NCBI GenBank assembly: GCA_002269645.1
Contig: NIVC01000581.1
Span: forward strand, 186,001-250,000
Reading direction: 5' to 3'
DNA from: Macrostomum lignano
Lineage: Eukaryota
Length of the DNA: 64,000 nt
Shown here: one piece after another, positions 16,869 to 49,491 of the stretch
How the letters are laid out: every line of letters begins with the position of its first letter
How positions within the stretch are numbered: position 1 is the first letter of the stretch
Notes under the pieces: generated by a model
The model's database searches: none
Told to the model about the DNA's origin: nothing
Seen by the model: the letters and a program-made list of their open reading frames with translations, nothing else
Program-made: the position numbers and the translations under genes

Positions 16869-18106
16869 GACCGGCACAGACAGGCAGATACGACCTGCGG
16901 GCAGCAGGGTTTTGGAGTTGCCTCACCTGAACTGCAATTCTTTATAGTTTCACGCTGTGCATTATACGAGCTAAGAGCACAACTCATTCTGGCGAAGAAT
17001 GAGCGAACGAAGCCATTGGGCTTTAATATTTCTGGGGTCGCTTTCAAAAGACAGTAAAATTTATAAGCTCGAAACTTCAGTGCGTCGAAATGGTCGAATT
17101 CGCTCAAGTTGCGAGCTAGCGGCTAGGGAGTGTCTAGCAAGACTTTTAGACAAGATGAAGTTTCGAGCTCGTGAAGCTGACTGAATTTTTTTTAGTTTTC
17201 AACCATTTGAAATTTTGAGCTTGATTATTTCGTTTAAATGCCATTAATAAAAGTGACCCGATGATTACTGTACCATACTGGCCTAAAGATTTAGACTTCT
17301 GAGCCTGACCGACCTGGACCGCCTGACAATTAGAAAATTGGTCTGCAAACTGGCCGTTTCAAAGCCTGCGTCAAGCAAGTGGTCGGCACTGGCCCGGCAC
17401 CCAGTGACCCAGTTTGAAAGGCTGGCTCCTTCCCACTGTCTTATCTACCGAGTAACAGCTTATCTTTGTCGTTGCATGCATTGCATACCTAAATCCATAC
17501 ACTAGAGAGAGAGAGAGAGAGAGAGAGAGCCCAGGCAAGACACTTTGAGTCAAAATTCGGTTACACAAATATCAAAACTGAGCGAGATAGTAGCATTCAA
17601 TGATTCACACACTCACTGGCTTATACAGACTCGAAATAAGCACTGAGTTCAAACTTACTTGGAGTTGAAGAGCTTCGTTGGTAAGTCAGTTAGCAGAAGG
17701 GCTTGTAGCGAATGCTGAAAACTCAGTTTAGCTCTGGCTGGCCTCGCTTTCCTGCCCTGATCTGAAACTCCTGTCCGTCCGCTGCTATATTGGAAACCGG
17801 TTCTCACCAACTCTCCTACTTCTTACCGCTTGTGCAAAGCGTGCAGCCACCCCCATCCGGTCCCCCTTCGCACCACCGCCGTCGCGTTGCCCGTAGCGAA
17901 TGAGAGGAGCGGACAGGGGGGGGGGAGAATGAGCGTGTCCTCTACTGCCACAGTGTGCAAGGACCCTTGCAAGGCAGCCAGTCCCTTGTCACATTCAGCC
18001 AATACCAACATTGGGGTTGAGGGTTCTGTGTGAGTGTGAACACATGCACAGCCAAAGTGGAGCCATTGCGACAGATTTAGGGGTGGCGAATCGGGCTGTT
18101 GTTGGT

Positions 18107-18470
18107 GGGTCATAGAGAAAGCTTCTGTCTGACCTGAAGCTTGGGTAAATGAGTGGCTGTGTTGGGTCATAGAGAAAGCTTCTGTCTGAAGCTTGGGTAA
18201 ATGAGTGGCTGTGTTGGGTCATAGAGAAAGCTTCTGTCTGAAGCTTGGGTAAATGAGTGGCTGTGTTGGGTCATAGAGAAAGCTTCTGTCTGAAGCTTGG
18301 GTAAATGAGTGGCTGTGTTGGGTCATAGAGAAAGCTTCTGTCTGAAGCTTGGGTAAATGAGTGGCTGTGTTGGGTCATAGAGAAAGCTTCTGTCTGAAGC
18401 TTGGGTAAATGAGTGGCTGTGTTGGGCATAGAGAAAGCTTCTGTCTTACCTGAAACTTGGGTAAATGAGT
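18107..18470. repeat. 52-bp minisatellite x~7
   Basis: Unit GGGTCATAGAGAAAGCTTCTGTCTGAAGCTTGGGTAAATGAGTGGCTGTGTT; period checked at 18181/18233. Confidence 0.95.
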
Positions 18471-20387: not shown

Positions 20388-22455
20388 ACAGTGTGCTGTG
20401 CATGCTGAGAGTGCATCCAGTGTGCTGTGCATGCCGAGAGTGCATCCAGTGTGCTGTGCATGCCGAGAGTGCATCCAGTGTGCTGTGCATGCCGAGAGTG
20501 CATCCAGTGTGCTGTGCATGCCGAGAGTGCATCCAGTGTGCTGTGCATGCCGAGAGTGCATGCCGAGAGTGCATCCAGTGTGCTGTGCATGCCGAGAGTG
20601 CATCCAGTGTGCTGTGCATGCCGAGAGTGCATGCCGAGAGTGCATCCAGTGTGCTGTGCATGCCGAGAGTGCATCCAGTGTGCTGTGCATGCCGAGAGTG
20701 CATGCCGAGAGTGCATCCAGTGTGCTGTGCATGCCGAGAGTGCATGCCGAGAGTGCATCCAGTGTGCTGTGCATGCCGAGAGTGCATGCCGAGAGTGCAT
20801 CCAGTGTGCTGTGCATGCCGAGAGTGCATGCCGAGAGTGCATCCAGTGTGCTGTGCATGCCGAGAGTGCATCCATGCAGTGTGCTGTGCATGCCGAGAGT
20901 GCATCCAGTGTGCTGTGCATGCCGAGAGTGCATGCCGAGAGTGCATCCAGTGTGCTGTGCATGCCGAGAGTGCATCCAGTGTGCTGTGCATGCCGAGAGT
21001 GCATGCCGAGAGTGCATCCAGTGTGCTGTGCATGCCGAGAGTGCATCCAGTGTGCTGTGCATGCCGAGAGTGCATGCCGAGAGTGCATCCAGTGTGCTGT
21101 GCATGCCGAGAGTGCATCCATGCAGTGTGCTGTGCATGCCGAGAGTGCATCCAGTGTGCTGTGCATGCCGAGAGTGCATCCATGCAGTGTGCTGTGCATG
21201 CCGAGAGTGCATCCAGTGTGCTGTGCATGCCGAGAGTGCATCCATGCAGTGTGCTGTGCATGCCGAGAGTGCATCCAGTGTGCTGTGCATGCCGAGAGTG
21301 CATCCATGCAGTGTGCTGTGCATGCCGAGAGTGCATCCAGTGTGCTGTGCATGCCGAGAGTGCATCCATGCAGTGTGCTGTGCATGCCGAGAGTGCATCC
21401 AGTGTGCTGTGCATGCCGAGAGTGCGTCTAGTGTGCTATGCATGCAGAGAGTGCATCCATGCAGTGTGCTGTGCATGCCGAGAGTGCATCCAGTGTGCTG
21501 TGCATGCCGAGAGTGCATCCATGCAGTGTGCTGTGCATGCCGAGAGTGCATCCATGCAGTGTGCTGTGCATGCCGAGAGTGCATCCAGTGTGCTGTGCAT
21601 GCCGAGAGTGCATGCCGAGAGTGCATCCAGTGTGCTGTGCATGCCGAGAGTGCATCCAGTGTGCTGTGCATGCCGAGAGTGCATGCCGAGAGTGCATCCA
21701 GTGTGCTGTGCATGCCGAGAGTGCATCCAGTGTGCTGTGCATGCCGAGAGTGCATGCCGAGAGTGCATCCAGTGTGCTGTGCATGCCGAGAGTGCATCCA
21801 GTGTGCTGTGCATGCCGAGAGTGCATCCAGTGTGCTGTGCATGCCGAGAGTGCATGCCGAGAGTGCATCCAGTGTGCTGTGCATGCCGAGAGTGCATCCA
21901 GTGTGCTGTGCATGCCGAGAGTGCATGCCGAGAGTGCATCCAGTGTGCTGTGCATGCCGAGAGTGCATCCATGCAGTGTGCTGTGCATGCCGAGAGTGCA
22001 TCCAGTGTGCTGTGCATGCCGAGAGTGCATCCATGCAGTGTGCTGTGCATGCCGAGAGTGCATCCAGTGTGCTGTGCATGCCGAGAGTGCATCCATGCAG
22101 TGTGCTGTGCATGCCGAGAGTGCATCCAGTGTGCTGTGCATGCCGAGAGTGCGTCTAGTGTGCTATGCATGCAGAGAGTGCATCCATGCAGTGTGCTGTG
22201 CATGCCGAGAGTGCATCCAGTGTGCTGTGCATGCCGAGAGTGCATCCATGCAGTGTGCTGTGCATGCCGAGAGTGCGTCTAGTGTGCTATGCATGCAGAG
22301 AGTGCATCCATGCAGTGTGCTGTGCATGCCGAGAGTGCATCCAGTGTGCTGTGCATGCCGAGAGTGCGTCTAGTGTGCTGTGCATGCAGAGAGTGCATTC
22401 AGTGTGCTGTGCATGCCGAGAGTGCGTCTAGTGTGCTGTGCATGCAGAGAGTGCA
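20388..22455. repeat. ~2.07-kb variant-repeat minisatellite (29-bp core GTGTGCTGTGCATGCCGAGAGTGCATCCA with +13 and +4 nt variants)
   Basis: Direct reading; explains all ORFs between 20210 and 22477 in the track. Confidence 0.97.
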
Positions 22456-23325: not shown

Positions 23326-24141
23326 GTGTTGTTTAGGTGGGCGCCCACCCCTCCGTCGGCGGGGGGGTATTTTACTCCAGCCGCGCTGCTGAGTCGGCAG
23401 TGTTTTCGCGCAGTTCTTTTTTTCGAAGGAAAAACTTTTCTGCGTGATCTGATCGAAGTGTGCAACGCTATGCGGCCTGACGAGAGAATTAAAGTCAGCT
23501 TACAGCTCTGTGACCAATTCAGCTGGTGGATTGTAGCGCTGGAGTCGGCCAGGTGGGTGGAGCTCTGGCCTGTTTTCAAGAACCATGTGGCAATCGAGTC
23601 CGATGCATGTGGAAGAGGCGGGCCAGCGGTGCTTCGAAGATCAGATGGCAGTTGGGACTGGTGCTACATCAATTGGAGCCAGGATGGGGCCGGAGTGTTC
23701 GCTGATCTGCCAATCAACTACAAAGAGGCGGTGGCTCCTTTGCTGTCAATCCTGCGCTGGAGGGAAGAGCTGAAAGGCTGTAACGTTAGCGTTTATTGTG
23801 ACAACATGGCGGCCTGTCATATTATCAATAATGGCACTTCGAGGTGTCCTGTCGTGCAGAGGCTACTGCAAACGATTGCGTTGATGTCTTTACGGCATGG
23901 TCTGAGTGTGCGAGCCTTTCATGTGCCGAGAGAGTTTCAAATTCTCGCCGATGCAGCGTCTCGGTTGCACGAGCGCAGTCAGTTGATTAATTTTTTATTT
24001 CGCTGCTATGGCAACTTGTGCCCGTTTGCTTTGAAATCAATGCATCGACATGCTTTCTGCCCTGCCTCTGCCCACTTTCTTCATTTTCAGGCCGTCCAGC
24101 TGCGCCAGACTCTCTCAGCCGCCGGGCCGCGTCGCTGCTAG
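23326..24141 (+). mobile_element. DIRS/Ngaro-type retroelement: RT C-terminal tether + RNase H (RT catalytic core deleted)
   Basis: GKTFLRDLIE..RIKVS..FSWW tether; ESDACG, INYKEAVA, VYCDNMAA, HVPREFQILADAASR match the DIRS1-type RNase H pattern; no YxDD upstream. Confidence 0.85.
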
Positions 24142-25650: not shown

Positions 25651-28600
25651 ATGCATTTCATGCTCACCATAGCAAGCGTTTTCCATCGCCCATCCCCGAC
25701 CACCCCGGATGGATCAGCGGCAGAGCCGAAGAACGAATTCGACGCGGTCGAAGCGCTGCTGGAGAATCCGGCAGATCGGCGGCTTGGCCTGGCGCAGAAT
25801 TTTCAGCGTCATCATCAGCAGGTATTTTGCATGGTGAAATCCACCTGCCTACTCAGCTCAGCTGAAACAGCTCAGTTTTTGAGACGGCTTCTTCTCAGAT
25901 TAGAATGCTTCAGTGCCAAACTTGGGCCCGCGGGGCTGGCAAAGCTTGAGCTGCTGCCCCGCCACTCAATAGTCCGGGCTGAGCAGCGATGCCTGAATTA
26001 TGCATGAAGTCCGCTGCCTGATGCGGGAACCGCTTGGACAGCACTTGCCGCTGCGGCACCGCACCATTTCTCACATTTGTGCACTGCTAGGCACTATTTA
26101 TAGATTTCTAAACTTGGTTTTGCTTTTAAACTGCGAGGACCAGCATGAAAAAACTGCTGATCGACCTGTGGTAGATCAGACTGAGACTGAGATCGATAAG
26201 TCTTAATAAACTTGCCCAACTCGCCTCTTGCAGAGCTCTCACTCAGTCTCGTCTGCAGAAGACTCGTTGGCTACCACGGGTAGTGCTGCGAGCGCCGCGG
26301 CAGACGAGACAGCAACCTGGAACGCTGCAGTTTTCCCAGTCAGCTGCGATGACGACAATGAGGACCACCGATCCAGCCTGCTCATGACCACTGTGAATGT
26401 TGTCAACTGCGTCATCGGCTCGGGCATAGTTGGTCAGTAATTTACCTTGAACTCAGAATAACTCCTGTCTAAAGCTGCTTAATGCCTTGCGTGGAACTGC
26501 AACTCCGCTGTTAGAGCTGGGGCGAATCCAATTAATGTGAATGATGGACACCTGCATCGTGGCACAGTGCGTACTGCACCTCCTGCACCAGGAAAAGCAA
26601 TAAGCTGCGACAGCCCCAACTCAGTAGTGTCTTGCCTTTTGCCCCGCCTTTTTTTAATGCCAGTCACTGGCTGCCTCTCATAGCCTGCACGAGATGTGGC
26701 AGAGAACTGGGGAAAAGTTGGCGGCCGGGGCGGCTGTCCGCATTGCGTGGCCTCCACTGGCGGTGGGCGTGCGGGCAGCGGGCAGAAACTGCTGCGAGGC
26801 GCGGCTGCTCCGGCACCCCCTGCGGGCTCCGACGTGAGCCGATGCGTGAGGGTCTGCGTAGCTGGGATTTGCGGGTGAACTCCCAAAGTCGGCTACTCTC
26901 ACAAGGCCTGTAGCTGTAGTTTAAGTCTCCTGCAGCCTGCTTGTTGTCTCCGCTGCACTATATTCTGGCTACCCTTGTCCCTGGCTTGTGGCGAATGACA
27001 AGTATGGATTTTGAGAAAATTCTAATTAAAGCTTCCATAATATTGGAAACGATATGCTCAGAAATGCGTGTGTACTGGCTTTACCATCTGAATGTGTGAA
27101 ATACGAGCCATATGTTTAATACTCGTTAGTTTGACTCGTATGTAGCAAGAGCTGCAAGCATGGAAACAAAAAATTAATTATAGTCTACTTTTCCAGAGCA
27201 GTAAGTAACCATATAGCACTAAAGCATAAAGACTATAAATGTACAGTACGACTTTAGACTACATCGGGTGTTGCCTACAAGACTAAAATGGGTGTCCTCT
27301 GTGAGACTAGATGCCGTGAGACTAGATGCCTTGCAACTAGATCGGGTATTACCTGTGAGACCAGATCAGGCGTCCATCGCGAGACTAAATCCGGTATTCC
27401 CTGTGAGACCAGATCAGGTGTCCAGACTAGATCCGGTATTCCCTGTGAGACCAGATCAGGTGTCCAGACTAGATCCGGTATTTCCTGTGAGACCAGATCA
27501 GGTGTCCAGACTAGATCCGGTATTCCCTGTGAGACCAGATCAGGTGTCCAGACTAGATCCGGTATTCCCTGTGAGACCAGATCAGGTGTCCAGACTAGAT
27601 CCGGTATTCCCTGTGAGACCAGATCAGGTGTCCAGACTAGATCCGGTATTCCCTGTGAGACCAGATCAGGTGTCCAGACTAGATCCGGTATTCCCTGTGA
27701 GACCAGATCAGGTCTCCAGACTAGATCCGGTATTCCCTGTGAGACCAGATCAGGTGTCCAGACTAGATCGGGGGTCACCTGAACAGACACAACACGCCTT
27801 CTCAATGAGCCCCGAACCGCCACCAGGCATTCCCTTCGCCCTGCACTGCTCCGGCATCGGCCTGGGCCTCCTGCTGCTGGCTGCTGTGGCGCTGGCCACC
27901 GACTACTCCATCCACCTCATCGTCACCGGAGGCGCCCTCTCAAATACCGTCTCTTATCAGGTATTAGCCACTTTTTCTGTTCTATTGACTCAAAATTAAC
28001 TTGTTTGATGCCGGATCGTTTAATGAAGAACAGTTACGGAGGAGGCAAAGATCTGATATCTGGGCAAGGACGACATGATAAATAGTATTGGAGACCGGTG
28101 AAAAAAACAGAACTGAAGTTCACTTGGTACATGAAAATAAAGGAGAGAAAGCTTAACACATTTTTTTGCATTCCTTTGTGAGTTGTCCTTGTCTGTGGCA
28201 TCGGCAACGCCAGGCATATTTTATCCGCTTTCCAGAACATGGCCAGAGTTTCCCTCGGCAAAGCGGGCTACCTGACTGCCACCGCCATGCAGGCCGTCTA
28301 CCCCTTCATCTGTGAGTCCGCTAGTTTCTTGTCCTGTGTCAAAGGACCACTGTTAGTCCCGTGAGAGTACTAGGCCAAGGACCACTGTTAGTCCCTTACT
28401 AGCCAAGGACCACTGTTAGTCCCTTACTAGCCAAGGACCACTGTTAGTCCCTTACTAGCCAAGGACCACTGTTAGTCCCTTACTAGCCAAGGACCACTGT
28501 TAGTCCCTTACTAGCCAAGGACCACTGTTAGTCCCGTGAGAGTACTAGGCCAAGGACCACTGTTAGTCCCTTACTAGTCAAGGACCACTGTTAGTCCCGT

Positions 28601-31600
28601 GAGAGTACTAGGCCAAGGACCACTGTTAGTCCCTTACTAGCCAAGGACCACTGTTAGTCCCTTGCGAGTACTAGGCCAAGGACCACTGTTAGTCCCTTAC
28701 CAGCCAAGGACCACTGTTAGTCCCTTGCGAGTACTAGGCCAAGGACCACTGTTAGTCCCTTACTAGCCAAGGACGACTGTTAGTCCCGTGATAGTACTAG
28801 GCCAAGGACCACTGTTAGTCCCTTACTAGCCAAAGACCACTGTTAGTCCCTTACTAGCATGGACCACTGTTAGTCTCGTGAGACTACTAGCCTGTTTACC
28901 TCGCCAATGCGTGCACAATTTTCCCTTTAACTGGACTCCAGCTCTGGTCAGCTACAATGTCATAATTGGGGACTCCATTGCCGAGATTGTCATCCGGACT
29001 CGAGGACGTGAGTAAATTTTTAAGCATTGGGTGCCGTAAATTCGTTGCTGAGCGTCGATGAATCTCAGCTGAGAATGGATCCACGAGTTCGAATTCCAAT
29101 TCCAAATCCCACAGCGGAGGCGCGCCATTCAGTTTTGGCCAACCGAAACTTTGCCGTCTTCCTCGCTTCGCTGTTCGTCTGCCTGCCGCTCAGCTTGTAC
29201 CGCAACATCTCTAAGCTGTCCAAGGTATGCGATGAGATGCATTTTGCAAGGTAGCTTTAAATTAATAAATTTAATGAAAGTAGCTACCAATGCATTTTTT
29301 TCATTTTTTAAACTTTTACGCGAGCCAACGAACAAAAAGGTTAAAAGGTCAAGTTTATTTACCGACAGTCGGCAGTGCAATTTTTGACCCTGAGAAACTC
29401 AAGTTTCAGAAACAACTTATACTATGCACAACTGAAATTTGTAACTTAAACGAAAATCAAGTTGTTTGGAATTTTTTTCTCTGAGTAGTTCGAACCGAAA
29501 GTGCATCAGCAGCCGACTGGGCCACGCCCAGATCACCACTGCTCGTCGACTCCACTGGCCTGCTTTGGCTGCCGCTCCAGCTGGATGTACTCTGCAACCA
29601 AGTCAACCGTTCGCTTCTCGGCCTCGGCAAAGTCCGCCTCGGTGAGGCCTTCGTACCAGTGCATGAAGGCGCGCTTCTTGAACATCTTGCGAAATTTGTC
29701 CACAGAGCGGGCCAGCGCGCGGGCCACGGCGGTGTGGTTGGCCACCAGCGTCCCACTGGCCGTAAAGCCCGGCGGCGGGATGTCGCAGACGGAGCGCATC
29801 ACGGCGTCCGGCACCAGGCCGCTGCTGGCGATGCGGCCGTTGGCCTTGGCGACTGCCGCGTCCACCTGCGCCATGCTGAGCCGGCCGCGGAACAGGGCGG
29901 CGCAGGCCAGGTAGCGGGCCTGCTTGTCGTCCCAGTGCATGAGGAAATTTTCCCTGCTCACCAATTCCTGCAAGAAAAAGGTTGCTTTGGCTGCTTCTGA
30001 GGTTGTTTCTAAGACACGAGCTAAATGAAAATGCAATTGGACTGGATTAGTGCTCCTTGATTTTTAGCTCGCCTTGAAATTAAAGGCTTTGAATTTTAGC
30101 ACTGAAGCCGAGCTAGCGCCTCGAATCTCTTAGAATGAAACCTTTTGTACTTTCTCATCGCCTGTCGAAGTTCCTGAGGGACGGTCAAACCGACAATGAA
30201 TAAGAATGCCGAAGGAGTTGCTGCTATCCGGCATCGCGGATATCCTGCTATCCTAGCTGTCTTACAAATCGTGGACCTAAATCTTGGTGAATATGCGATC
30301 TTTAATAGAACTGACGCGCCTGCAAAGCGACCGAAAGATCGCCGGGTGAACTGGGAGTTCCCTATCAAAAAGCCATCACTGGATAAGCAATCACCTGCAT
30401 GAGACCCTGTGGGCCGAGGTTGCGGCTTTGCTCGGCGAAATTGCGGGCCAGCGGAGCCTGGCTGAGAGTCAGGAAGTGCAGCCGGGGAAACGGCACAAGG
30501 TTGGCGGTGACGCCGCGCCAGTCGGAATTCTGCTGGCCGGGGAACCGGACGCAGGCGGTGGTGCCGGACATGGCCAGCGCGGCCACGGAGTTCATGACGT
30601 CGTAGTTCGGGTGAGCGGTGCGCAGCTTGCCGGAGCCGATGCGCGCGAGCGCCTCGTTGTCGATTGCGCAGACCACGTCGGCGCTGTCGATCAGAGCGGG
30701 CACGCTCAGCACTGCATTGTAGGGCTCGACCACCTTGTCCGAGACCACCGGGCTGGGCAGCACCGTCCAGGTCGTCACCAGCCGGGTGTTGTCGTCGCGC
30801 AGTTCGCGCAGAAATGCGCTGACGAGGCCCGAGCCAGTGCCGCCGCCGATGGCATGGATGACCTGCACGGCCTGGAGGGATTCGAGAGTCTCGCTGACGC
30901 GCCGGAAGTTTTCCATCAGGTTGTCGACGACCTTGCTGCGGTGCAGCAGTCCGTGCGAGAAAACGTTGCCCGTGCCAGCCGAGCCGCTCACGTGCGGCAG
31001 GGTGATGAGCATTGGCAGCTGCCATCTGTTGTACTTGGTCGAGTCTGTCACGTTGCCGGAGTCCACCAGGATAGCCCGCGGCACGTGTCGCTTCATTTCG
31101 ATGTCGCTGAAGTACACATCGATGTACTGAAGTTGCAGGTGGCTGTTGCCGTGGTACACTCCCAGGTGGTCCACCCCGTGCTCCGTCCGAATGTAGTCCC
31201 AGAACTGTTTTCAGGCATACAAGAATTAGGAAGTTTTCTGTGACTTTTCCACACACCTTCATAAGTTTTTAATTATAGAGGCTCACCTGATTTCCTAGCC
31301 GGATGCCGGCGCCACCCACTTGCACAGTGAGAATCTCCCGCATGGCGAATGGATCTTGGCTGGCTGGGCAGTTCGTTATGGAATGCAGCAGGAACGGTTT
31401 GACTCTAGCAGCAAAATGCGCGCATATCCTTAACTGCTTGTCTGTGGTTCAACCCAGGGACATTTGCCGAGCCAGTTGCGATCATGGAGGAAAGAATAGA
31501 ATGGAGTGCTAATCTGAGCCAGTTATTTTTATCTCGCTCGATTTTCGCTTTTAACATCCCTTTCCCCCCGTTCTTTCCTATTGGCTCGTGACTGCCATAG

Positions 31601-33706
31601 ACAAAGTATTTTTCGTCTCGTTTTCGCTTTCGTTCCCCTCTAAAAGGTACGAGCGTATGTCCCAGCATAGTACGAGCTCGCATCAAAATATGCTTTCAGC
31701 CAATAGGAAGGAACGGGGGGGAAAGGGATGTTAAAAGCGAAAATCGAGCGAGAAAAATAACTGGCTCAGATTAGCACTCCATTCTATTCTTTCCTCCATG
31801 GTTGCGATTAACGCTACACACGTCTAACGCCTTGGGTAAAAGAGTTGATAAACTTCCATTTTTTGAGCATATTAGCAGCAAATTGAGCCGCAGAACATGA
31901 GAACGCAGTGTTGGGGTTATAATGGTAATTACTGGTTACTAATGCCCTCGTAGAGTTTTCTTTACTTACCTCCCGAATTTCGGATATCCCATGTCGCACG
32001 TTTCCATTGTATTTCAGACATCGCTTCTGTCAACTGCGGTCCTGTGCCTCATCATGCTTTCTATGGCCTCCAGACTGTCCGCCTACTCGCCTGTTGCGTA
32101 AGTTGTTCCCGCTCAAGCATCGGTTCTCAGGCATATCAAGCATAGTGCTGAGTTAATGCTAGCTGCTGAGTTAAAGTTGCTGAGTTAAAGTTGCAGTTGC
32201 AGCTGAGATCTTCACGAGCTGTAGCCCGCTCCAGCATACTTATGAATTGATTTTTTTGGCCGGACCGCCACGAAATAGCGTATACAAAAACAGCAAAATC
32301 GATTAGTTAAAGTATACCAATAGAACCACAATGCCTCTAATTTATTGATACTTTATTTGCAGTAAAATAACTCGTAGCAGCATACTAAATTTATAAGATT
32401 GCCTAAGAAACTTTTTTGATACTCTACTAATAGTAGAAATATAAGGAAAATACGCTAACAGTAGAAAAAAAATAGAGTACTTTCAATACACATACATGTA
32501 CTGTTCCTTAGTCCTAGTCCTCAAGAGTCCTTGAGGATAAGAAGATTGATACCTCGCGTGTTCCTCTTTGTTAGGGATATCTTTTGAAAGATAATTTTGA
32601 TCTTTTGAAAGCTACTTCCAGTTTGCTTGTATTTACACTGGCAAATTTAGAATGAGGTGAAAGCGCAAGGTGAGTTTGCATCAGACTTTCATGGCTCTGC
32701 AACCCTGCTTCACCAGAACGCCTGCGGAGTTTGAGTGGACATTCGCCAATGACAGAGTTCCCCAGGCCGTGTGCATTATGGCTGCCGGTGAGACACATCG
32801 TTTCTCAAGCACTTCTTGATTCGCTTATCAGTAGCACGAGCACTGCATACTGCAACGCTCACAGGAAGAGGTGTCAAGCATTTCACGACACCCCCATATT
32901 AAACTGCAGCTTTCATGTGCCAGCACAGCACGCACCTGTGCTTTCACTCGCTGCAGCGTCGCAGCCTGTCGCGCTGGTCGCTCGTGTCGCACGCCGCCGT
33001 TGGCAGCTGCCTGCTGATCTTCGGCATCTTCGGCGCCCTCGGCTTCGCCACCTTCACCTCGGCTGTGCAGCCCGATGTGCTGGAAAATTACTGCAGCTGG
33101 GACGACCTGATCAACTTCTCCCGGCTGCTGTTCGCTGCATCTCTCGTGCTCACCTTCCCAGTTGACTGCTTCGTAGTCAGAGAGGTCGTGGAGACCTTTC
33201 TGTTCCAGCGCCCCGGCTCGCCGCTCTGGCGCCACGTGACAGTCACCGGCACCGTCGTCGGCTGTGCATTTCTGGTCTCCATGGCAACACCTTGTCTTAA
33301 CATTGTTCTGCAGCTGAATGTGAGGAATTTTTGAAGTTCACGAATAATAGCTGGATGTATTCAGCCCGAGACCATTCTCACCGACCCCTCCCTCACCCAG
33401 GGCATCCTCACAGCGGCTCCGCTCGCTTTCATCCTGCCGCCGCTGTGCGTGCTGCAGCTGCAGGACGAGCCCTTCTGCCGGCTGGCAAACCTCCCGCTGC
33501 TGGCCACCGCCGCCTTTGGCTGCCTCATCGTCGCCGCTGGCTTCGCCGCGATAGTCGCGGACCTGTGGAGCGGCGGAGGTGCAGGCGTCGGTGGGTCCGC
33601 ATCTGCCTGCTTCGGGATCCGCGGTGCCGAGACGGCTTCAGCCGCGCTAGCGTACTGCCTGACATCTTCGGCGGCCAACAGCAGCGCAGCGGCTGCTGCC
33701 GGTTGA
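25651..33706 (+). CDS. SLC38A11: SLC38A11-like amino-acid transporter (AAAP family). Exons 25651(uncertain start)-25821, 26234-26432, 27827-27960, 28236-28311, 28942-29007, 29115-29224, 32018-32097, 32717-32787, 32910-33319, 33401-33706
   Basis: All GT-AG junctions are phase-consistent. Motifs NVVNCVIGSGIVGIPF, TDYSIHLIVTGGALS..YQ, YPFI..SYNVIIGD, LPLSLYRNISKLSK, AFMCQHST..SL, VLQLNGILTAAPLAFILP match SLC38A11 as recalled. The 5'-most exon is the least certain. Confidence 0.88.
27350..27770. repeat. 42-bp minisatellite x~10 in SLC38A11 intron 2
   Basis: Unit CCTGTGAGACCAGATCAGGTGTCCAGACTAGATCCGGTATTC. Confidence 0.95.
28345..28875. repeat. 28-bp minisatellite with longer variant units, filling SLC38A11 intron 4
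   Basis: Unit GGACCACTGTTAGTCCCTTACTAGCCAA, with GTGAGAGTACTAGG-type variants. Confidence 0.95.
29533..31343 (-). CDS. Highly divergent beta-like tubulin, 433 aa; exons 31343-31287, 31204-30395, 29967-29533; nested antisense in an SLC38A11 intron
   Basis: Exon 1 MREILTVQVGGAGIRLGNQ ends at codon 19 (the conserved beta-tubulin intron position), then FW..EHG..PRAILVD, GGGTGSG, VVEPYNA, IDNEAL, RFPGQ, VPFPRLHF, beta-type CDIPP loop and AFMHWY. All junctions are GT-AG, phase 0, with no internal stops. Confidence 0.92.
31483..31800. mobile_element. 318-bp MITE, ~104-bp TIRs, perfect 8-bp TSD (P-element- or hAT-class)
   Basis: CATGGAGG...CCTCCATG ends; TIRs 31483-31586 and 31698-31800; TSD GTTGCGAT at 31475-31482 and 31801-31808. 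Confidence 0.9.
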
Positions 33707-33742: not shown

Positions 33743-33972
33743 ATCCTGATCTATAAGTACATGCAGATCTATAAGTACATGCAGATCTATAAGTACATGC
33801 AGATCTATAAGTACATGCAGATCTATAAGTACAAGCAGATCTATAAGTACAAGCAGATCTATAAGTACATGTGGATCTATAAATACATGCAGATCTATAA
33901 GTACATGCAGATATATAAGTACATGCAGATCTATAAGTACATGCAGATCTATAAGTACATGCAGATCTATAA
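33743..33972. repeat. 18-bp minisatellite (GATCTATAAGTACATGCA) x~13 just after the SLC38A11 stop
   Basis: Direct reading. Confidence 0.95.
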
Positions 33973-34351
33973 CTCCGCCCGGGACAAAGCTGGCCCTCGT
34001 GGTGCATTCCCCCCCCCCAAAGTCGCATCAGTCAAAACATGCTCGCACAGCCGACCATTCTTTCTGGCTCGGCCTCGTCCGTATTGGATCCAAAAAAATT
34101 CTCAGCTACAAGTAACCTGTACTCAATGTACTCAGTTTTGAACTTCTAGCTAATCGGGCTAAAAAATTAAGCTTTAGTTTTAACCGACAGTTGGTCCGTC
34201 GAGCTGAGCCAATTGGGATTCATTGGCAGAGATCTGAAGCTTTGAAGCAAGTTGAAGCTTGACAAGAGCATGACGTGGCATTTGTTTCCACAATCTCTTT
34301 TAGCGCCGCTGAGTCAACTATAGCTATATTGAATTTGACAAAGTTTGGCTG

Positions 34352-34562
34352 TAGGTCAGTAGGTCAGTAGATCAGTAGGTCAGTTGGTCAGTAGGTCAGT
34401 AGGTCAGTAGGTCAGTAGATCAGTAGGTCAGTAGGTCAGTAGGTCAGTAGATCAGTAGGTCAGTAGGTCAGTAGGTCAGTAGGTCAGTAGGTCAGTAGGT
34501 CAGTAGGTCAGTAGGTCAGTAGGTCAGTAGGTCAGTTGGTCAGTAGGTCAGTTGGTCAGTAG
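34352..34562. repeat. 8-bp tandem repeat (TAGGTCAG) x~26
   Basis: Direct reading. Confidence 0.95.
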
Positions 34563-35863
34563 GAATACCAAGCTATTTTTCCACCCGTCGAGCTACGTCG
34601 AATGTCCATATCCATATTTCATAGTCTCAGCATTGGAAGCAATGCACATTAGAAAACTTAGTCCAAACCTAATAATTCATATAGACAATAACCGCGCCAG
34701 CGTCCAGCTTAAAATATTCTGAACTTTAGTACCATCTATTCTACTTCATATTCATATCATTTATCTGACTTGCGCCGTTCAGCATTCAGTGTTTCATTTG
34801 CAAAAATCTGCTTAAAAAACAGCATTATATACCTGGTTTAGCGAAACATGTCGCATAATTAAATTACTACGTAAAAACAATTTCTTCGTCGATTTTTCTC
34901 TTTTTGATTCTTACGAGATTCAGAAAACTTTCTAAGTTGTACTGCAAGATCAGCACTAGATATGGAATCACAGTACCAGAAAGGACCTGCTTGACCGTTT
35001 AGAACTGTGTGACCACGAATTTATGCGCTTAAGTATAACTATTGAATATATTGAAGTCTCAATTTAATCCCTTACCAGCATAATTTCAGTCATGCAATTT
35101 CGAAAAGCCCGGACAGACGCAGGCTACCTGGGTGGCCCTAGCCCGGACCACTGCTCCAGTGCACTGCAGCTTGCTTGCATTCACTGAGAAAGCTCAGTGA
35201 GACAGAATTCTGTTTGCCCATTTTTTCAAACTCGTTGCTCACCTCCGGGCCGGCCTTACTGCAGTTGGATCACATGACGCCTCGTATTAATGATGTCTTG
35301 AGTATGCTCAGGGAATGCCATCAATAGGCACACTTGTGTGCAAATGCAAACATGCGCTCCTACATGGCCAGCCCAAATCATTCTCCGCCCCAGAACAACT
35401 CGCGCTGCTCTGCTTGTTTGCTGAGCTCTCCTGAACCACGAGAAATGCGCAGGCCAGTTGCTGGGCTCAGAGAGAGCCGCCAAAGTGAACGTTAGAAAGC
35501 GCGATTCGCTAACGTTTTGCTTTGTTTGACGAGTTCCTGTGGCTTGCATGGGCCTGCTGACTGTGTCAACTGTGCAGAAGGGGGCATGAAAACCCTGTAA
35601 ATCGTGTTGCAAGGCTCGATTAATCCTTTTAAATCTACACACCTCGCGCACAACTCTTTGCGGGCTTATTGAATTATTTGACTAACTGTCGAAATTCCCT
35701 ACTTCACTGTCTCAGTCTGTTTCGAAATGTGCACCAAATCCAACTTTAGCACAATAGCCGAAGACTTTGGTCAAGACACTCTAAACAGGTTTCCACAGGC
35801 CTCCGAAAGCTGGGGCATCAGTTCGGCAGCAACAAAATAGGCTGCTTGTAATTAAGCTGCCCA

Positions 35864-38307: not shown

Positions 38308-39457
38308 ATGGCTCAGCAGATTAGGTTTTGCTACATCCGCTGCAAGAAATTTGCTCTAATTCGACGAGTCGCCAGTCTTTACGTGACAGTGGGCGCTACC
38401 TTAATATTTCTATTTTTCTGCCTGCATCAGAAGCACTTCAGTCAAAACAGTTTCGATTCGCAACCTGAGTACCAGTCCAATGAGGAGCTGCTTCCCCAGT
38501 CTCCGTTCGGCATCGCCAACAGCACTGATGCCGCCTTCAAGAAGCTGTACCTGCACGTGCTTGATCGCATGAACAGCTCGCTTTACGGGTTCGATAGGCC
38601 CGGCCGGCTGCTTCCCCTCATGCGGCTGTCAAGAGCCGAGAGGAGCCGCGCGTGTGGCAGCCACCGTGCGCAACGGCATGGCCGGTCTGCCGAGCTCCCT
38701 GCACAACATCCAGCGCCTGCGAGCCCTGTTCAACAGCTCCTGGCTGGTCTTGCTTGAGAACGACTCGACCGACTTGACTCGCGACTACTTGCACAATTTA
38801 ACACTTACTGACCCCACCGTGACGCTGCTGGGCTGCGGCCGGGTCAACTCCCCGCTGCCCTGCCGAGTCAAAATTCGCTACAGCAGCGGTCGCATACACA
38901 AGCCCGGCTACAAAATGAAGCGCAGCTTCACTGAAGAAGTCGAGCGCGGTCTGATAATGTCCGCCCTGCGCAACCAGTACCTGGACTACATATACAAACA
39001 CCTGGCTGATCAGGCATCGATGCTGCTCATAATCGACCCGGATATAAGTTGGATGGAGTGGGATCTGGACAATATAGCACAGGGTGTCTATTACTTCGCT
39101 GCGAAGCCCCAGCTGCAGCAGCTGTGCGCTCACACCACGTACAAAGGCAACATTTACGACCCATGCACGCTGAGCTTCCACCTGAACAAGCGCTTCGGTG
39201 AGGACACAAAGTACCCCGTGGTCAGCTATGAAAAGTCGCTTCGCGATGCACCCAACAACCTGCCGCCTGTAAAGGTGGAGAGCTGCTTCCAGGCTGTGTC
39301 GTTTTATCGCATGTCCGATCTGAGATCGCGCAGGCTGCTTTACGAGCGCAGTCCGGGCGAGTGGATTTGCGAGCACAACACTCTGTCCAGACAGCTGCAC
39401 GAAGTGTACATCGATCCTCAGATGAGGCTCCGTGTCAAGGACGAAAATACACCCTGA
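38308..39457 (+). CDS. Intronless type-II membrane GT-A glycosyltransferase (CAP59/GT69-like), interrupted by a single frameshift at ~38645-38656
   Basis: ORF 38308-38757 gives an N-terminal TM (LYVTVGATLIFLFFCL) and stem. The +1-frame ORF 38654-39457 gives ATVRN, VLLENDSTDLTRDYL, MSALRNQYL and the DxD motif LLIIDPD. Joined length ~383 aa. Confidence 0.7.
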
Positions 39458-45015: not shown

Positions 45016-46505
45016 GACTTAGCTTGACTTAGCAGCAGGGGGCTCCGTGCGTCCGGAAACAGTGAGGAGGCGTTGCCGCCCATTTCGCTAACCCCTGGCG
45101 ACCACGGGCAGCTAGTGCTGCGGTGTCGCGCAGGGAGTTCCGGTGGCGCCGGCGTCCGCAGCGCGGTCCCCCTCTGGAGAGTCCAGGAGGTGGATTGTCG
45201 CTCGCCCGGTAGCCCTTAGGTAGCGGACAAGCTGGCAGAGATTCTCGGGCCTGAAAACGTCGGAGAGGTCCGGGTTTGGGCCGAGGTAGGTGAGCCTGTC
45301 CTGAGTAAAGGCGGGGCATTCACAGATGAAGTGCTCCGCATTCTTGACACCGGAGAGGCAGAAAGGGCATTCCTCACTGCGGATTTTCTCCTGGAGGTAA
45401 CGATGCCTGGCAAAGCAGCCATGACCCGAGAGGGCCATGGTAACCGCCCTGATGTCCCTGCGGTTGAGTCCAAGCAGGGCCCTGCGTAGGGCGGGGGAGG
45501 GACAGGGGACAGCCACGCGGGATTGCCGGCAGTCGGGGGCGTTAGCCCACCTCTCCCTGTGCTTAGAAGCCACCCACTGGTTGATCCGAGTGGTGACAAT
45601 GGCGATGGGGGTAGGGGCCACGGGCAGGGGACCAGTAAAAGAACCCGTTGAGCCAGCCTTGGCCAGACGATCAGCCAGCTCGTTGCCGGGGTGGCCCGAA
45701 TGCCCAGGGATCCACCTTAGGAACACCTTGTTGGAGGCACCTAAGTGGTTGAGCTGCCCGATGCAGTCGAGGACTATACGCGAGCAGGTGGTAGTGCGCT
45801 CAAGGGCGTGAATCGCTGCTTGACTGTCCAAGTGGAGGGTAATTTCCTTCCCCCAGACGCGCTGATTGTACAGCTCCATGGCGCAGGAACTGATGGCGAG
45901 AACTTTGTTCTGGAAGACGGTGGAGCAGATGCCGGTGTGTTGGGAGAAGGTCGCCACAGTTCTCCCTCCAGACACGATGCAGTAGCCGTATCTAGAGGCG
46001 GAGTTGATTTGGGACCTGTCAGTGAAGCAGTGGATTTCATGGGGTTTCCAGTTGTCTCTCGCTTCATGGCATGGTGGAATGCTGGTTTTGAATTTGAGCG
46101 GGGGGCAGAGTGTGGACGGGATTCCATCCGAGAGGGTCAGCAAGCCTCTCGCTGCTTCCAGGTCTTGCAGGCTGAGGTCGCCATGCGGCTGGAGGTTCCG
46201 CTTTCTGAAGGCAAACTGCTTCTGGATTTGGACACCCGCGTCAAGCAGACGACGGGTGGTTTTCATAGCCTCCCCTCTAACAAAGAGGTCGAGGGGGGGA
46301 ATGTCCAAGAAGGAGTTCATGCCAGCGAAGGGCGTTGAGGGAGCCGCGCTCATGATAGCTCGACAAGCGCGGCCTTGCACCTTATTTAAAACCTCAAGAA
46401 CCCCTTTTACCTCTAGGGCACTGTTCCAAATGAAGCCGGCGAAGGAGATGGCCGGTCTAACAATGGCAGTGTAAATCCACCAGAGGCGGCGGGGGGTGAG
46501 GCCCC
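45016..46505 (-). mobile_element. 5'-truncated non-LTR retrotransposon (LOA/R1 group): RT C-terminus + RNase H + CCHC finger
   Basis: [17 protein letters not shown]; [22 protein letters not shown]; RNase H FTD / FQNK (E>K) / DSQAA / WIPGHSG..GNELAD; [28 protein letters not shown] at 45003-45015 and 46506-46518. Confidence 0.92.
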
Positions 46506-48780: not shown

Positions 48781-49491
48781 TATATTAAAAAGTTTTTGAG
48801 CATCAAACTAAAATAAAAATATTTAGTTAAATGTCTTTGAAAAGAACTGTTCTTAGTTTTTAATAGAATTGGAAATATGCTTCAATCAAGCTAGCAAATT
48901 AAGGTAAAAGGTAAAAGTGCAAAACTTTCTGCATTATTCAAGTTTTTATTGGTTTTTCTCAGCCTAAAAGTTATTTAAATTAAATATCTACTTTTTATAC
49001 CCCAATATTTATTTAATTAAGCTTAGTAGAGGAAGGAATAATATAGAAATACTTAATCAATGTACTTATAAGTCATGTCAAGTATCAGATTATTTCTAAA
49101 TTGCATATTAAAATATTGTTATCTTAAATTTACCTAATATGTTGCCCTTGCATCTATAATATGTGGCTAAATAAATGATAAATCATTCAACTTTATACTT
49201 AAAGGAATAATATGAGAGTGCATTGAATTCAGTGTTGATCTTGAACAATCAAAATGGCAATATTTTAGATATAATAAAAACTTTCAATATTTGACAGATT
49301 GATTCCTTTATTGTGGCCCCATTAAAGCAAAAAGTTTAAATTCTGATAAATTATCTCTAGGCTACATGTTGATTTCCTTTAAAAATATAAGTCGAAGATT
49401 TTCTATCAACCAGTACCTGAGATGCAAAGTTGCCAAAGAAACCTGGAATCTGCAGACCAGCCCCTCAATCCATCGCCATCCAGCAGCCTTC

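What the first reader, a model, noticed from the sequence alone, without database searches (positions are those of the whole stretch)
29533..31343. Intact but radically divergent, tail-less beta-like tubulin hidden antisense in a transporter intron
Seen: an open 433-aa frame with canonical splice sites, the ancestral codon-19 intron, the MREI N-terminus, GGGTGSG and a beta-type S9-S10 loop. Core residues are changed: GQCGNQIG>GGAGIRLG, DLEPGT>DSGNVT, GNNWAKG>GNVFSHG and DLRKL>DWRGV (the beta Lys opposite alpha's catalytic Glu254 becomes Gly). The acidic E-hook is replaced by ..ERQPKQASGVDEQW, so there is no EGEF axonemal motif and few glutamylation sites. Known: beta-tubulins are usually very highly conserved, MREI drives TTC5 autoregulation, and the tail recruits motors and MAPs. 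Inference: a lineage-specific tubulin isotype or class with altered nucleotide handling, perhaps for specialised microtubules (e.g. flatworm sperm cortical arrays), or a non-polymerising regulator still under tubulin autoregulation.
Basis: partly seen in the sequence, partly recalled or inferred. Interest (0 to 1): 0.78.

Follow-up and report, generated by a model that had tools for sequence, protein, structure and literature searches.

The report
Divergent tail-less beta-like tubulin gene
The flatworm Macrostomum lignano carries an intact, strongly conserved gene for a beta-tubulin relative that is as different from normal beta-tubulin as alpha-tubulin is, lacks the usual acidic tail, has no counterpart in other organisms in the databases searched, and has an unknown cellular role.

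Summary
On the minus strand, three exons (31343-31287, 31204-30395, 29967-29533) with GT-AG introns encode a 433-aa protein with both Pfam tubulin domains. The window is Macrostomum lignano contig NIVC01000581.1. The gene is already annotated as hypothetical protein BOX15_Mlig010323g3, from a transcriptome-based annotation, so it is not hidden.

It is 40-41% identical to canonical beta-tubulins, against 30% to alpha and epsilon, 29% to gamma and 22% to delta. It falls in the beta-like clade (89% NJ bootstrap) and shares the phase-0 intron after codon 19 with mammalian and cestode beta-tubulin genes. A scan of 1.84 billion representative proteins found no orthologue outside M. lignano.

It is not decaying. 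Three genomic copies differ at 9 synonymous and 1 nonsynonymous sites (omega about 0.04, p=2e-5), while introns differ at 5.4%.

The fold, G-box, T5, T6 and T7 backbone are kept. T1, T2 and T3, Lys254, helix H3, the H2-S3 region and the M-loop are replaced, and the E-hook is absent.

It sits antisense in an intron of an amino-acid transporter gene.

Most likely it is a neofunctionalised, lineage-restricted beta-like tubulin, comparable to the Tetrahymena BLTs. Expression site and polymerisation remain untested.

The parts
31287..31343 (-). Exon 1: ATG plus codons 1-19 (MREILTVQVGGAGIRLGNQ). It contains the altered T1 loop GGAGIRLG. The donor is GTGAGC.
   Evidence: The exon 1 length of 19 codons and the phase-0 donor are identical in Meles TUBB1 and Echinococcus beta-tubulin genes.
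31205..31286 (-). Intron 1 (82 nt, GT..AG, 35% GC), at the conserved beta-tubulin position after codon 19.
30395..31204 (-). Exon 2: codons 20-289. It covers the GTPase domain (T2-T7, G-box GGGTGSG) and the M-loop.
29968..30394 (-). Intron 2 (427 nt, GTGATT..TTGCAG, 45% GC), phase 0 after codon 289. It is not seen in the two comparator beta-tubulin genes.
29533..29967 (-). Exon 3: codons 290-433 plus the TGA stop. It covers the Tubulin_C domain, H11, H12 and a short non-acidic tail ...ERQPKQASGVDEQW.
29354..29359 (-). AATAAA hexamer about 174 nt downstream of the stop. It is a candidate poly(A) signal by consensus match only.
31459..31824 (.). Palindromic, MITE-like insertion starting about 120 bp upstream of the ATG. 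Its inverted arms are 31459-31586 and 31698-31824. It is present in this copy only and absent from the two paralogous copies.
26210..29251 (+). 5' exons of the host gene, an Aa_trans (SLC36/38-like) amino-acid transporter. Coding pieces lie at about 26351-26437, 27862-27996, 28240-28310, 28920-29010 and 29135-29236. Exact splice sites were not determined.
   Evidence: open frames; the concatenated pieces hit PF01490 profile positions 1-150, E=6.5e-15, 55 bits.
32903..33703 (+). 3' exons of the same Aa_trans host gene (PF01490 profile positions about 205-408).
   Evidence: E=1.3e-22, 80.5 bits.

Best explanation
This is a functional, lineage-restricted paralogue of beta-tubulin in Macrostomum lignano. 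In the Mlig_3_7 assembly it is the gene cluster Mlig010323, with three near-identical copies.

Shown:
- It descends from a beta-tubulin gene.
- After duplication it changed about 60% of its residues.
- It is now held almost invariant by purifying selection.
- It keeps the tubulin fold and the core of the guanine-nucleotide site: G-box, T5, the T6 Asn, the H7 Tyr and Asn, and the T7 backbone.
- It has replaced the T1, T2 and T3 phosphate/Mg loops, the beta-specific T7 lysine, nearly all of the lateral-contact elements (H2-S3, H3, M-loop) and parts of both longitudinal faces (H8, H10-S9).
- It has lost the acidic E-hook.

Inferred mechanism:
- It still binds GTP or GDP and pairs with an alpha-type partner.
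- Its new lateral surfaces and missing tail would stop it mixing freely into the canonical lattice.
- They would also stop it recruiting tail-dependent motors, MAPs, glutamylases and glycylases.
- It would therefore build, or be confined to, a specialised non-axonemal microtubule population, as the noncanonical beta-like tubulins (BLT1, BLT4) of Tetrahymena do.
- Where that population is in the animal is unknown.

My confidence is about 0.9 that it is a functional, beta-derived, lineage-restricted tubulin. It is about 0.45-0.5 that it acts as a polymerising beta subunit of specialised microtubules.
For: Identity and descent:
- Pfam Tubulin and Tubulin_C both match.
- The best 60 PDB sequence hits are all beta-tubulin, E about 1e-100.
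- Identity is 40-41% to beta, 30-32% to alpha, 29-31% to epsilon, 29% to gamma and 22% to delta.
- NJ bootstrap places it inside the beta-like clade at 89%. It groups with alpha, gamma or delta in 0% of replicates and with epsilon in 0.2%.
- The phase-0 intron after codon 19 is shared with mammalian and cestode beta genes.
- The S9-S10 loop has beta length.
- The AlphaFold2 model has pLDDT 80.7 and pTM 0.87. Its 50 best Foldseek PDB matches are all beta chains, TM 0.87-0.91.

Functionality:
- Three genomic copies (window, L001, L006) encode proteins that differ at one tail residue.
- There are 10 variable CDS sites, 9 synonymous and 1 nonsynonymous. Omega is about 0.036, binomial p=2.4e-5.
- The nonsynonymous rate is 0.1% per site, against 5.4% variable sites in introns (Fisher p=2e-12).
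- GC3 is 0.86, like neighbouring genes.
- The GenBank models derive from an RNA-seq-guided transcriptome assembly with expression filters.

Lineage restriction:
- An exhaustive HMMER scan of 1.84e9 representative proteins found nothing between 42% and 93% identity.
- The word-indexed search of 5.8e9 proteins agrees.

Pattern of change:
- 44 of 135 positions that are at least 98% conserved in 88 canonical beta-tubulins are altered.
- Kept, as residues identical to the canonical consensus: S2 5/5, T5 8/10, T7 6/8.
- Lost: H2-S3 0/10, H3 2/19, T2+H2 2/10, H10-S9 1/8, M-loop 5/14.

Precedent:
- Tetrahymena BLT1 and BLT4 carry C12A, M-loop and H3 changes and lack EGEF and EEEE.
- They nevertheless incorporate into non-axonemal microtubules (PMC3382179).
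Against: - No direct expression, localisation or biochemical data were found.
- At 40% identity it is far more divergent than the BLTs (65% and 56%). Both longitudinal interfaces carry indels: a 2-residue deletion in the H10-S9 region and a 2-residue deletion in the H11-H12 loop.
- The T2 Glu and the T7 Lys are lost. Dimerisation with a canonical alpha-tubulin and lattice incorporation are therefore far from assured.
- The selection test covers only the shallow divergence among the three copies, about 2-5% at neutral sites.
- The timing of the duplication is unresolved. Only 3 of 16 M. lignano-specific canonical-beta states are shared, which is a weak hint.
Confidence: 0.6

Rival explanations
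1. It is a non-polymerising tubulin-fold protein. In this reading a beta-derived protein is kept for a non-lattice role. Examples would be capping microtubule ends, sequestering or chaperoning alpha-tubulin, or acting as a structural or templating component in the way delta, epsilon and gamma tubulins do. It would not be a bulk lattice subunit.
For: - Lateral-contact elements are almost entirely replaced: H3 2/19, H2-S3 0/10, M-loop 5/14, with the M-loop Tyr changed to Ser.
- Both longitudinal faces carry deletions and lose conserved residues, including the Trp344-equivalent (changed to Leu), the T7 Lys (changed to Gly) and the T2 Glu (changed to Gly).
- AlphaFold confidence is lowest in the T2-H2-S3-T3 segment.
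- Strong purifying selection shows that some function exists.
- Findeisen et al. 2014 propose structural, non-polymerising roles for very divergent Paramecium beta-tubulins (PMC4202323).
Against: - The G-box, T5, T6, the H7 nucleotide contacts and half of H12 are retained. That is more than a pure scaffold would seem to need.
- The best-studied analogues, the Tetrahymena BLTs, do enter microtubules.
- No data exist on partners.
Confidence: 0.3
2. It is a decaying duplicate or pseudogene. In this reading the open frame survives only by chance or by recent origin.
For: - 33% of near-invariant beta positions are changed.
- No orthologue exists elsewhere.
- No expression record was found in paper supplements.
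Against: - Three copies keep intact 433-codon frames and canonical splice sites.
- They differ by 9 synonymous and 1 nonsynonymous changes (omega about 0.036, p=2.4e-5), while their introns differ at 5.4%.
- Codon usage is native and strongly biased, with GC3 of 0.86.
- The annotation is transcript-derived.
Confidence: 0.03
3. It belongs to an ancient non-alpha/beta class (delta, epsilon or zeta), or is a relic of an unrecognised ancient class, and is not a derived beta.
For: Its distance to beta (40%) is as large as the alpha-beta distance (39.5%). In the NJ tree it sits at the base of the beta-like clade, not among metazoan beta-tubulins.
Against: - It never groups with delta or gamma, and groups with epsilon in 0.2% of bootstraps.
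- Identity to delta is 22% and to epsilon about 30%.
- All top hits in an exhaustive library scan are beta.
- It shares the beta-specific intron position.
- It has the MREI start and a beta-length S9-S10 loop.
- A basal position is what long-branch attraction would produce. Its apparent sister P0186 shares no excess of derived states.
- No named zeta sequence was included.
Confidence: 0.04
4. It is an assembly, annotation or contamination artefact.
For: The M. lignano assembly is highly redundant and repeat-rich. Older ML2-based models of the same gene are frameshifted (P0002, P0009).
Against: - The same gene occurs on three contigs with collinear M. lignano flanks.
- It has spliceosomal introns and sits nested within a host-gene intron.
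- Its codon usage is native.
Confidence: 0.01

Closest known systems
Canonical metazoan beta-tubulin (for example M. lignano A0A1I8HMF1, insect beta1, Echinococcus beta-2)
   Same: - The tubulin fold, with TM 0.87-0.91 to beta chains.
- The MREI start.
- The G-box GGGTGSG, T5, the T6 DNEAL motif, the H7 Tyr and Asn, and the RFPGQ and VPFPRLHF motifs.
- A beta-length S9-S10 loop.
- The phase-0 intron after codon 19.
   Different: - Only 40% identity. M. lignano's own canonical beta is 89% identical to insect beta1.
- T1 reads GGAGIRLG.
- The T2 loop is one residue shorter and lacks the Glu.
- T3 reads NVFSH in place of NNWAK.
- The T7 Lys is changed to Gly.
- H3, H2-S3 and the M-loop are replaced.
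- There are two 2-residue deletions, in the H10-S9 region and the H11-H12 loop.
- There is no acidic tail and no EGEF motif.
Tetrahymena thermophila noncanonical beta-like tubulins BLT1 and BLT4 (Pucciarelli et al. 2012, PMC3382179)
   Same: - They are beta-derived paralogues with substitutions in the GTP pocket (including C12A), in H3 and the M-loop (including the M-loop Tyr) and in the longitudinal faces.
- The GGGTGSG motif is retained.
- They have no EGEF axoneme motif and no poly-Glu modification site.
- This is a resemblance in how the protein may work, not shared ancestry.
   Different: - They arose independently, in a ciliate rather than a flatworm.
- The BLTs are 65% and 56% identical to their canonical beta, against 40% here.
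- The BLTs have long divergent tails (458-471 aa), whereas this protein is shorter than canonical beta.
- BLT localisation is known (spindle and cortical microtubules, not cilia). Nothing is known here.
Other uncharacterised divergent beta-like tubulins found here (Ptychodera flava XP_070536937.1, Tritrichomonas musculus KAK8840813.1, Mycena and Flagelloscypha 'beta-tubulin 2', Apiculatamorpha)
   Same: They are long-branch members of the beta-like clade with altered T1 loops and non-canonical tails.
   Different: - None is an orthologue. They are 33-38% identical to the query, which is less than canonical beta is.
- Most are closer to canonical beta (42-58%) than the query is.
Delta- and epsilon-tubulin
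   Same: They show a comparable degree of divergence from alpha and beta, have no E-hook and have specialised roles.
   Different: - The query is 22% identical to delta and about 30% to epsilon.
- It never groups with delta and groups with epsilon in only 0.2% of bootstraps.
- Delta and epsilon are ancient, widely distributed classes. This protein is confined to one lineage.

Membership tests
Tubulin superfamily (eukaryotic tubulin) | Tubulin/FtsZ GTPase domain followed by the Tubulin C-terminal domain; tubulin fold | tested here: met
   PF00091 E=1.5e-35 and PF03953 E=1.2e-17, both above the gathering cut-offs. AlphaFold2 pTM is 0.87 and Foldseek TM is 0.87-0.91 to tubulin chains.
Tubulin superfamily (eukaryotic tubulin) | G-box/T4 signature GGGTGSG | tested here: met
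   IGGGTGSGL at residues 138-146.
beta-tubulin | Closer to beta than to any other class, by both score and tree | tested here: met
   Identity is 40-41% to beta against at most 32% to alpha, gamma, delta and epsilon. NJ bootstrap for the beta-like clade including the query is 89%. The top 60 PDB sequence hits and top 50 Foldseek hits are all beta. Zeta was not sampled by name.
beta-tubulin | Very high sequence conservation typical of canonical isotypes (at least about 75% identity across eukaryotes) | tested here: not met
   40% identity. 44 of 135 positions that are at least 98% conserved in 88 canonical beta-tubulins are changed.
beta-tubulin | T1 loop GQCGNQIG | tested here: not met
   GGAGIRLG.
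beta-tubulin | T7 loop Lys254 (alpha-aligned numbering), where alpha has the catalytic Glu | tested here: not met
   The residue is Gly (K252G in plain numbering). It is not the alpha-type Glu either. The T7 Asp and Arg are retained.
beta-tubulin | Short S9-S10 loop without the alpha-specific 8-residue insertion | tested here: met
   The alignment to beta is ungapped across DIPPPGFTASGT, and 5 of 5 conserved sites are kept.
beta-tubulin | Acidic C-terminal tail (E-hook) with glutamylation/glycylation sites and, in axonemal isotypes, EGEF | tested here: not met
   The tail IQLERQPKQASGVDEQW has 3 acidic and 2 basic residues. There is no EGEF and no downstream acidic exon.
beta-tubulin | Conserved phase-0 intron between codons 19 and 20 of metazoan beta-tubulin genes | tested here: met
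   The position and phase are identical in Meles meles TUBB1 and Echinococcus granulosus beta-tubulin.
beta-tubulin | Forms a heterodimer with alpha-tubulin, exchanges GTP at the E-site and polymerises | not testable with these tools
   This needs biochemistry or multimer modelling. Only monomer prediction was available.
alpha-tubulin | MREC start, catalytic Glu254 and the S9-S10 insertion | tested here: not met
   The protein has MREI, Gly at the T7 position and no insertion. It is 30-32% identical to alpha and groups with alpha in 0% of bootstraps.
delta- / epsilon-tubulin | Groups with named delta or epsilon sequences | tested here: not met
   Identity is 22% to delta and 29-31% to epsilon. 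Bootstrap support is 0% and 0.2%.
zeta-tubulin | Groups with named zeta sequences | not tested
   No named zeta sequence was obtained. The indirect evidence is that every top hit in the exhaustive 1.84e9-protein scan is beta-like.
Noncanonical beta-like tubulins (a functional kind, exemplified by Tetrahymena BLTs; not a clade) | Beta-derived; GTP-pocket and interface substitutions with GGGTGSG retained; no axoneme motif or polymodification site | tested here: met
   compared with PMC3382179. Incorporation into non-axonemal microtubules, the functional hallmark, was not testable.

The most novel reading that the evidence does not exclude
The gene founds a Macrostomum-specific tubulin class that no longer behaves as a lattice beta subunit. 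It would either form its own polymer with new lateral contacts or act as a cap or regulator. One possible setting is the sperm of this flatworm, which I recall, from knowledge I did not verify here, as lacking axonemes and relying on cortical microtubules. That would make it a rare, recent birth of a new tubulin function in an animal that can be studied by RNAi and transgenesis.
Probability: 0.2. Interest if true: 0.7.

Novelty: new member of a known kind. Interest (0 to 1): 0.42.

Why it matters
Beta-tubulin is among the most conserved eukaryotic proteins. A metazoan paralogue that has drifted to alpha/beta-level distance, yet is now held under omega of about 0.04, is a natural experiment.

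It shows which parts of tubulin can be rewritten: the lateral contacts, the T1-T3 loops, the T7 lysine and the E-hook. It also shows which cannot: the G-box, T5, T6, T7 backbone, the H7 base contacts and the S1-S2 core.

M. lignano offers RNAi, in situ hybridisation and transgenesis, so the function is directly testable.

The result would bear on two questions. One is the multi-tubulin and tubulin-code hypothesis, namely what a tail-less, non-modifiable beta does. The other is how new cytoskeletal polymers or regulators arise.

It is not a categorically new thing. Divergent beta-like tubulins are documented in ciliates, and similar unstudied sequences occur in other lineages.

Tried and rejected
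1. Expression evidence.
- A full-text search for 'Mlig010323' found nothing.
- Searches of the held supplements of six M. lignano transcriptomic papers (PMC5816591, PMC5730564, PMC7336406, PMC12896417, PMC5946080, PMC8662610) also found nothing. A seventh paper, PMC10786194, had no supplements held as text.
- Some supplement files may be truncated, so absence is not informative.
- No M. lignano single-cell atlas was found.

2. Orthologue hunt.
- The only sequence that groups with the query in the NJ tree is P0186, at 76% bootstrap. It comes from Logan assemblies of SRR29782982, SRR29782978 and SRR29782974, and the organism is unknown.
- It is 34% identical to the query and does not share the query's deletions.
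- It shares no more derived states with the query than unrelated divergent tubulins do: 20, against 21, 21 and 21.
- I rejected it as long-branch or compositional attraction.

3. P0002 and P0009. They look like 79% and 58% identical paralogues, but they are frameshifted gene models of the same gene from the older ML2 assembly. They are not usable for dN/dS.

4. Epsilon-tubulin in the PDB. It is not there. I obtained named delta and epsilon sequences from the protein database instead. Zeta could not be obtained.

5. Hidden acidic-tail exon downstream. None was found.

6. Foreign origin or contamination. I rejected this on native GC3, spliceosomal introns and three syntenic copies.

7. Timing of the duplication. 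Shared rare states with M. lignano canonical beta (Q19, L115, S193; 3 of 16 sites) give only a weak hint of an origin within the Macrostomum lineage.
Full report
1. What is in the sequence

- On the minus strand, ATG at 31343 opens a 19-codon exon (MREILTVQVGGAGIRLGNQ) that ends in the donor GTGAGC.
- After an 82-nt intron, exon 2 runs 31204-30395 (270 codons, donor GTGATT).
- After a 427-nt intron with acceptor TTTCTTGCAG, exon 3 runs 29967-29533 and ends in TGA.
- The three exons join in frame to 1302 nt, or 433 aa.
- Pfam finds Tubulin (E=1.5e-35) and Tubulin_C (E=1.2e-17).
- The 60 best PDB sequence matches are all beta-tubulin chains, at E about 1e-100 over residues 1 to about 423.
- An ORF with these scores is not a chance product.

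2. Source and annotation status

- The 433-aa product is 100% identical to 'hypothetical protein BOX15_Mlig010323g3 / g1 [Macrostomum lignano]' (PAA72309.1, PAA80446.1).
- The window is contig NIVC01000581.1 of assembly GCA_002269645.1, with a 100% match over 21.8 kb.
- A third copy, g2 (PAA51787.1, contig NIVC01003358.1), differs only by S427G. UniProt auto-names it 'Tubulin beta chain'.
- The gene is therefore annotated, not hidden, but no paper I could search mentions it.
- That GenBank annotation was built from a genome-guided transcriptome assembly: StringTie and TACO on RNA-seq plus a de novo transcriptome, with strand and RPKM filters (Wudarski et al. 2017, PMC5730564).
- A model with exactly these splice junctions is thus indirect evidence of transcription and splicing. 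I found no direct expression record.

Against 88 canonical beta-tubulins:
- MREI and GGGTGSG are kept.
- T1 GQCGNQIG becomes GGAGIRLG.
- T2 VDLEPGT becomes VDSG-NVT. The loop is one residue shorter and the Glu is lost.
- T3 GAGNNWAKG becomes GTGNVFSHG. The first Asn is kept.
- T7 NADLRKL becomes NSDWRGV. The Asp and Arg are kept, and the beta-diagnostic Lys becomes Gly.
- The S9-S10 loop has beta length.
- The tail after the EY anchor is IQLERQPKQASGVDEQW, with 3 acidic and 2 basic residues. An insect beta1 tail has 12 acidic and 0 basic residues.
- No acidic open stretch lies within 5.5 kb downstream on that strand, so a missed E-hook exon is unlikely.
- The intron after codon 19 is at the identical position and phase in Meles meles TUBB1 and an Echinococcus granulosus beta-tubulin gene.

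4. Which tubulin is it

- In a trimmed 434-column alignment it is 40-41% identical to canonical beta-tubulins from animals, fungi, apicomplexans, diatoms and kinetoplastid relatives.
- It is 30-32% identical to alpha, 29-31% to epsilon, 29% to human gamma and 22% to delta. The gamma sequence was verified against PDB 7qj0.
- M. lignano's own canonical beta is 89% identical to insect beta1. The alpha-beta identity in the same alignment is 39.5%. The protein is therefore as far from beta as alpha is.
- Neighbour-joining with 500 bootstraps puts it in the beta-like clade (canonical plus divergent beta-tubulins) in 89% of replicates.
- It groups with alpha, gamma or delta in 0% of replicates and with epsilon in 0.2%.
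- An AlphaFold2 model (pLDDT 80.7, pTM 0.87) superposes on beta chains with TM 0.87-0.91. All 50 best Foldseek hits are beta chains.
- I could not obtain a named zeta-tubulin. The indirect argument is that every top hit in an exhaustive HMMER scan of 1.84 billion cluster representatives is beta-like.

5. Lineage restriction

- The same scan found nothing between 42% and 93% identity.
- The hits above 90% are mis-framed older models of this same gene (P0002, P0009).
- Other divergent beta-like tubulins exist (Ptychodera, Tritrichomonas, basidiomycetes, various protists). They are less similar to the query (33-38%) than canonical beta is.
- The one apparent sister is P0186, an intronless ORF on Logan contigs of unknown origin (76% bootstrap).
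- P0186 is 34% identical and lacks the query's deletions.
- It shares no more derived states with the query than unrelated sequences do. I read the grouping as long-branch attraction.
- Three of 16 rare states of M. lignano canonical beta (Q19, L115, S193) recur in the query. This is a weak hint that the duplication happened within the Macrostomum lineage.

6. Is it decaying

No.
- The three genomic copies are the redundancy expected from the duplicated DV1 karyotype. Aligned across the gene, they show 27 variable sites in 500 aligned intron positions (5.4%).
- In 1302 coding positions they show only 10 variable sites, 9 synonymous and 1 nonsynonymous. The nonsynonymous change is S427G in the tail.
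- With 317 synonymous and 982 nonsynonymous sites, omega is about 0.036.
- The binomial probability of at most 1 nonsynonymous change among 10 under neutrality is 2.4e-5.
- Nonsynonymous sites against introns give Fisher p=2e-12.
- Gene conversion could lower exon divergence but would not produce the synonymous/nonsynonymous asymmetry.
- GC3 is 0.86, in line with neighbouring genes (0.62-0.82), so codon usage is native.
- The test reaches only as deep as the copies' divergence.

7. What has changed and what has not

Figures are residues identical to the canonical consensus.
- Kept: S2 (5/5), T5 (8/10), T7 (6/8), S8 (7/10), the S9-S10 loop (5/8, all 5 highly conserved sites), H8-S7 (9/14), the H11-H12 loop (7/12) and H12 (11/22).
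- Also kept: all 10 highly conserved sites of the H1-S2 loop, plus the G-box, the T6 Asn and the H7 Tyr and Asn.
- Replaced: H2-S3 (0/10), H3 (2/19), T2+H2 (2/10), H10 (3/17), H10-S9 (1/8, with a 2-residue deletion and loss of the conserved Trp), H9-S8 (3/16), H8 (2/8) and the M-loop (5/14, with the Tyr changed to Ser).
- The H11-H12 loop also has a 2-residue deletion (HWYTGEGMDE becomes HWY--EGLTE).
- AlphaFold confidence is lowest over residues 71-100 and in the tail.
- By established tubulin structure knowledge, H3, H2-S3 and the M-loop make the lateral protofilament contacts. T7, H8 and H10-S9 face alpha within the dimer. T2, T3, T5 and the H11 region face the next dimer.
- The nucleotide-binding core is thus largely kept, while the lattice contacts, especially the lateral ones, and the modifiable tail have been rewritten.

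8. Most likely mechanism and its rival

- Shown: this is a beta-derived, lineage-restricted, selectively maintained tubulin-fold gene.
- Inferred: it still binds guanine nucleotide. Either it pairs with an alpha-type partner to build a specialised, non-axonemal, tail-less microtubule population, or it acts off-lattice as a cap, a sequestering factor or a structural element.
The closest studied analogues behave that way.
- Tetrahymena BLT1 and BLT4 show the same kinds of change: C12A, M-loop Tyr and H3 changes, and no EGEF or EEEE. They still incorporate into spindle and cortical, but not ciliary, microtubules (PMC3382179).
- The M. lignano protein is far more divergent (40% against 56-65%) and has indels in both longitudinal faces. 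The non-polymerising reading is therefore a serious rival.

9. Genomic setting

- On the plus strand, open pieces at 26.2-29.25 kb together match Aa_trans (PF01490) profile positions 1-150 (E=6.5e-15).
- Pieces at 32.9-33.7 kb match positions 228-408 (E=1.3e-22), collinearly.
- The intron may contain a further small exon that I did not find.
- The GenBank record lists no gene model spanning the tubulin.
- The window copy alone carries a palindromic MITE-like insertion of about 320-365 bp at 31459-31824, beginning about 120 bp upstream of the ATG. Its coding sequence is nonetheless unchanged.

10. Verdict

- This is a new, uncharacterised member of a known kind, the noncanonical beta-like tubulins. 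It is unusual among animals for its degree of divergence combined with strong constraint.
- It is moderately interesting, and it is experimentally tractable in M. lignano.

Noticed in passing
window 31459-31824: A palindromic, MITE-like element begins about 120 bp upstream of the tubulin ATG. Its inverted arms are 31459-31586 and 31698-31824, up to 98% complementary. It is present only in this copy (g3) and absent from the g1 and g2 loci. It might alter this copy's promoter or 5' UTR.
   Followed up: partly
window 20389-22455: A satellite of about 2.1 kb with nested periods of 29, 62 and 71 nt (unit CAGTGTGCTGTGCATGCCGAGAGTGCATC). It is open in all six frames, so the long ORFs listed there are spurious.
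   Followed up: no
window 18106-18446; L001 19194-21812: A 52-nt tandem repeat has 6.5 copies in the window but spans more than 2.6 kb at the paralogous locus L001. This is a large copy-number difference between the duplicated loci.
   Followed up: partly
window 27336-27769 (within open frame 27223-27996, + strand): A 42-nt tandem repeat of 10 copies is in frame with the second Aa_trans exon and encodes a 14-aa repeat (PVFPVRPDQVSRLD). Whether it is coding or intronic was not determined.
   Followed up: no
window 23326-24141 (+) and 45112-46380 (-): Retroelement remnants: a weak RT_RNaseH match (E=1e-3, below the cut-off) and an RNase_H domain ORF (E=2e-10).
   Followed up: no
window 49366-50547 (+): A 393-aa ORF with a rhodopsin-family 7tm_1 domain (E=6e-16). 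It is probably a single-exon or first-exon GPCR gene.
   Followed up: no
window 28342-28875, 33748-33972, 34351-34563: Further tandem repeats of 28/63 nt, 18 nt and 8 nt lie in introns of, or just downstream of, the transporter gene. The locus is very repeat-rich.
   Followed up: no
L003 308-1615 (Logan SRR29782982), also L004 and L005: An intronless 435-aa divergent beta-like tubulin (P0186) from an unidentified organism. Its T1 loop reads GGCG and its composition is GC-rich. It is followed 89 nt downstream by a 280-aa ORF. It is not an orthologue of the query, but it is another example of the same kind.
   Followed up: partly
window about 38308-39457 (+); L001 2672-3868: A 398-aa gene is called at the paralogous locus and matches no Pfam family. 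The corresponding ORFs in the window also have no Pfam hit.
   Followed up: no
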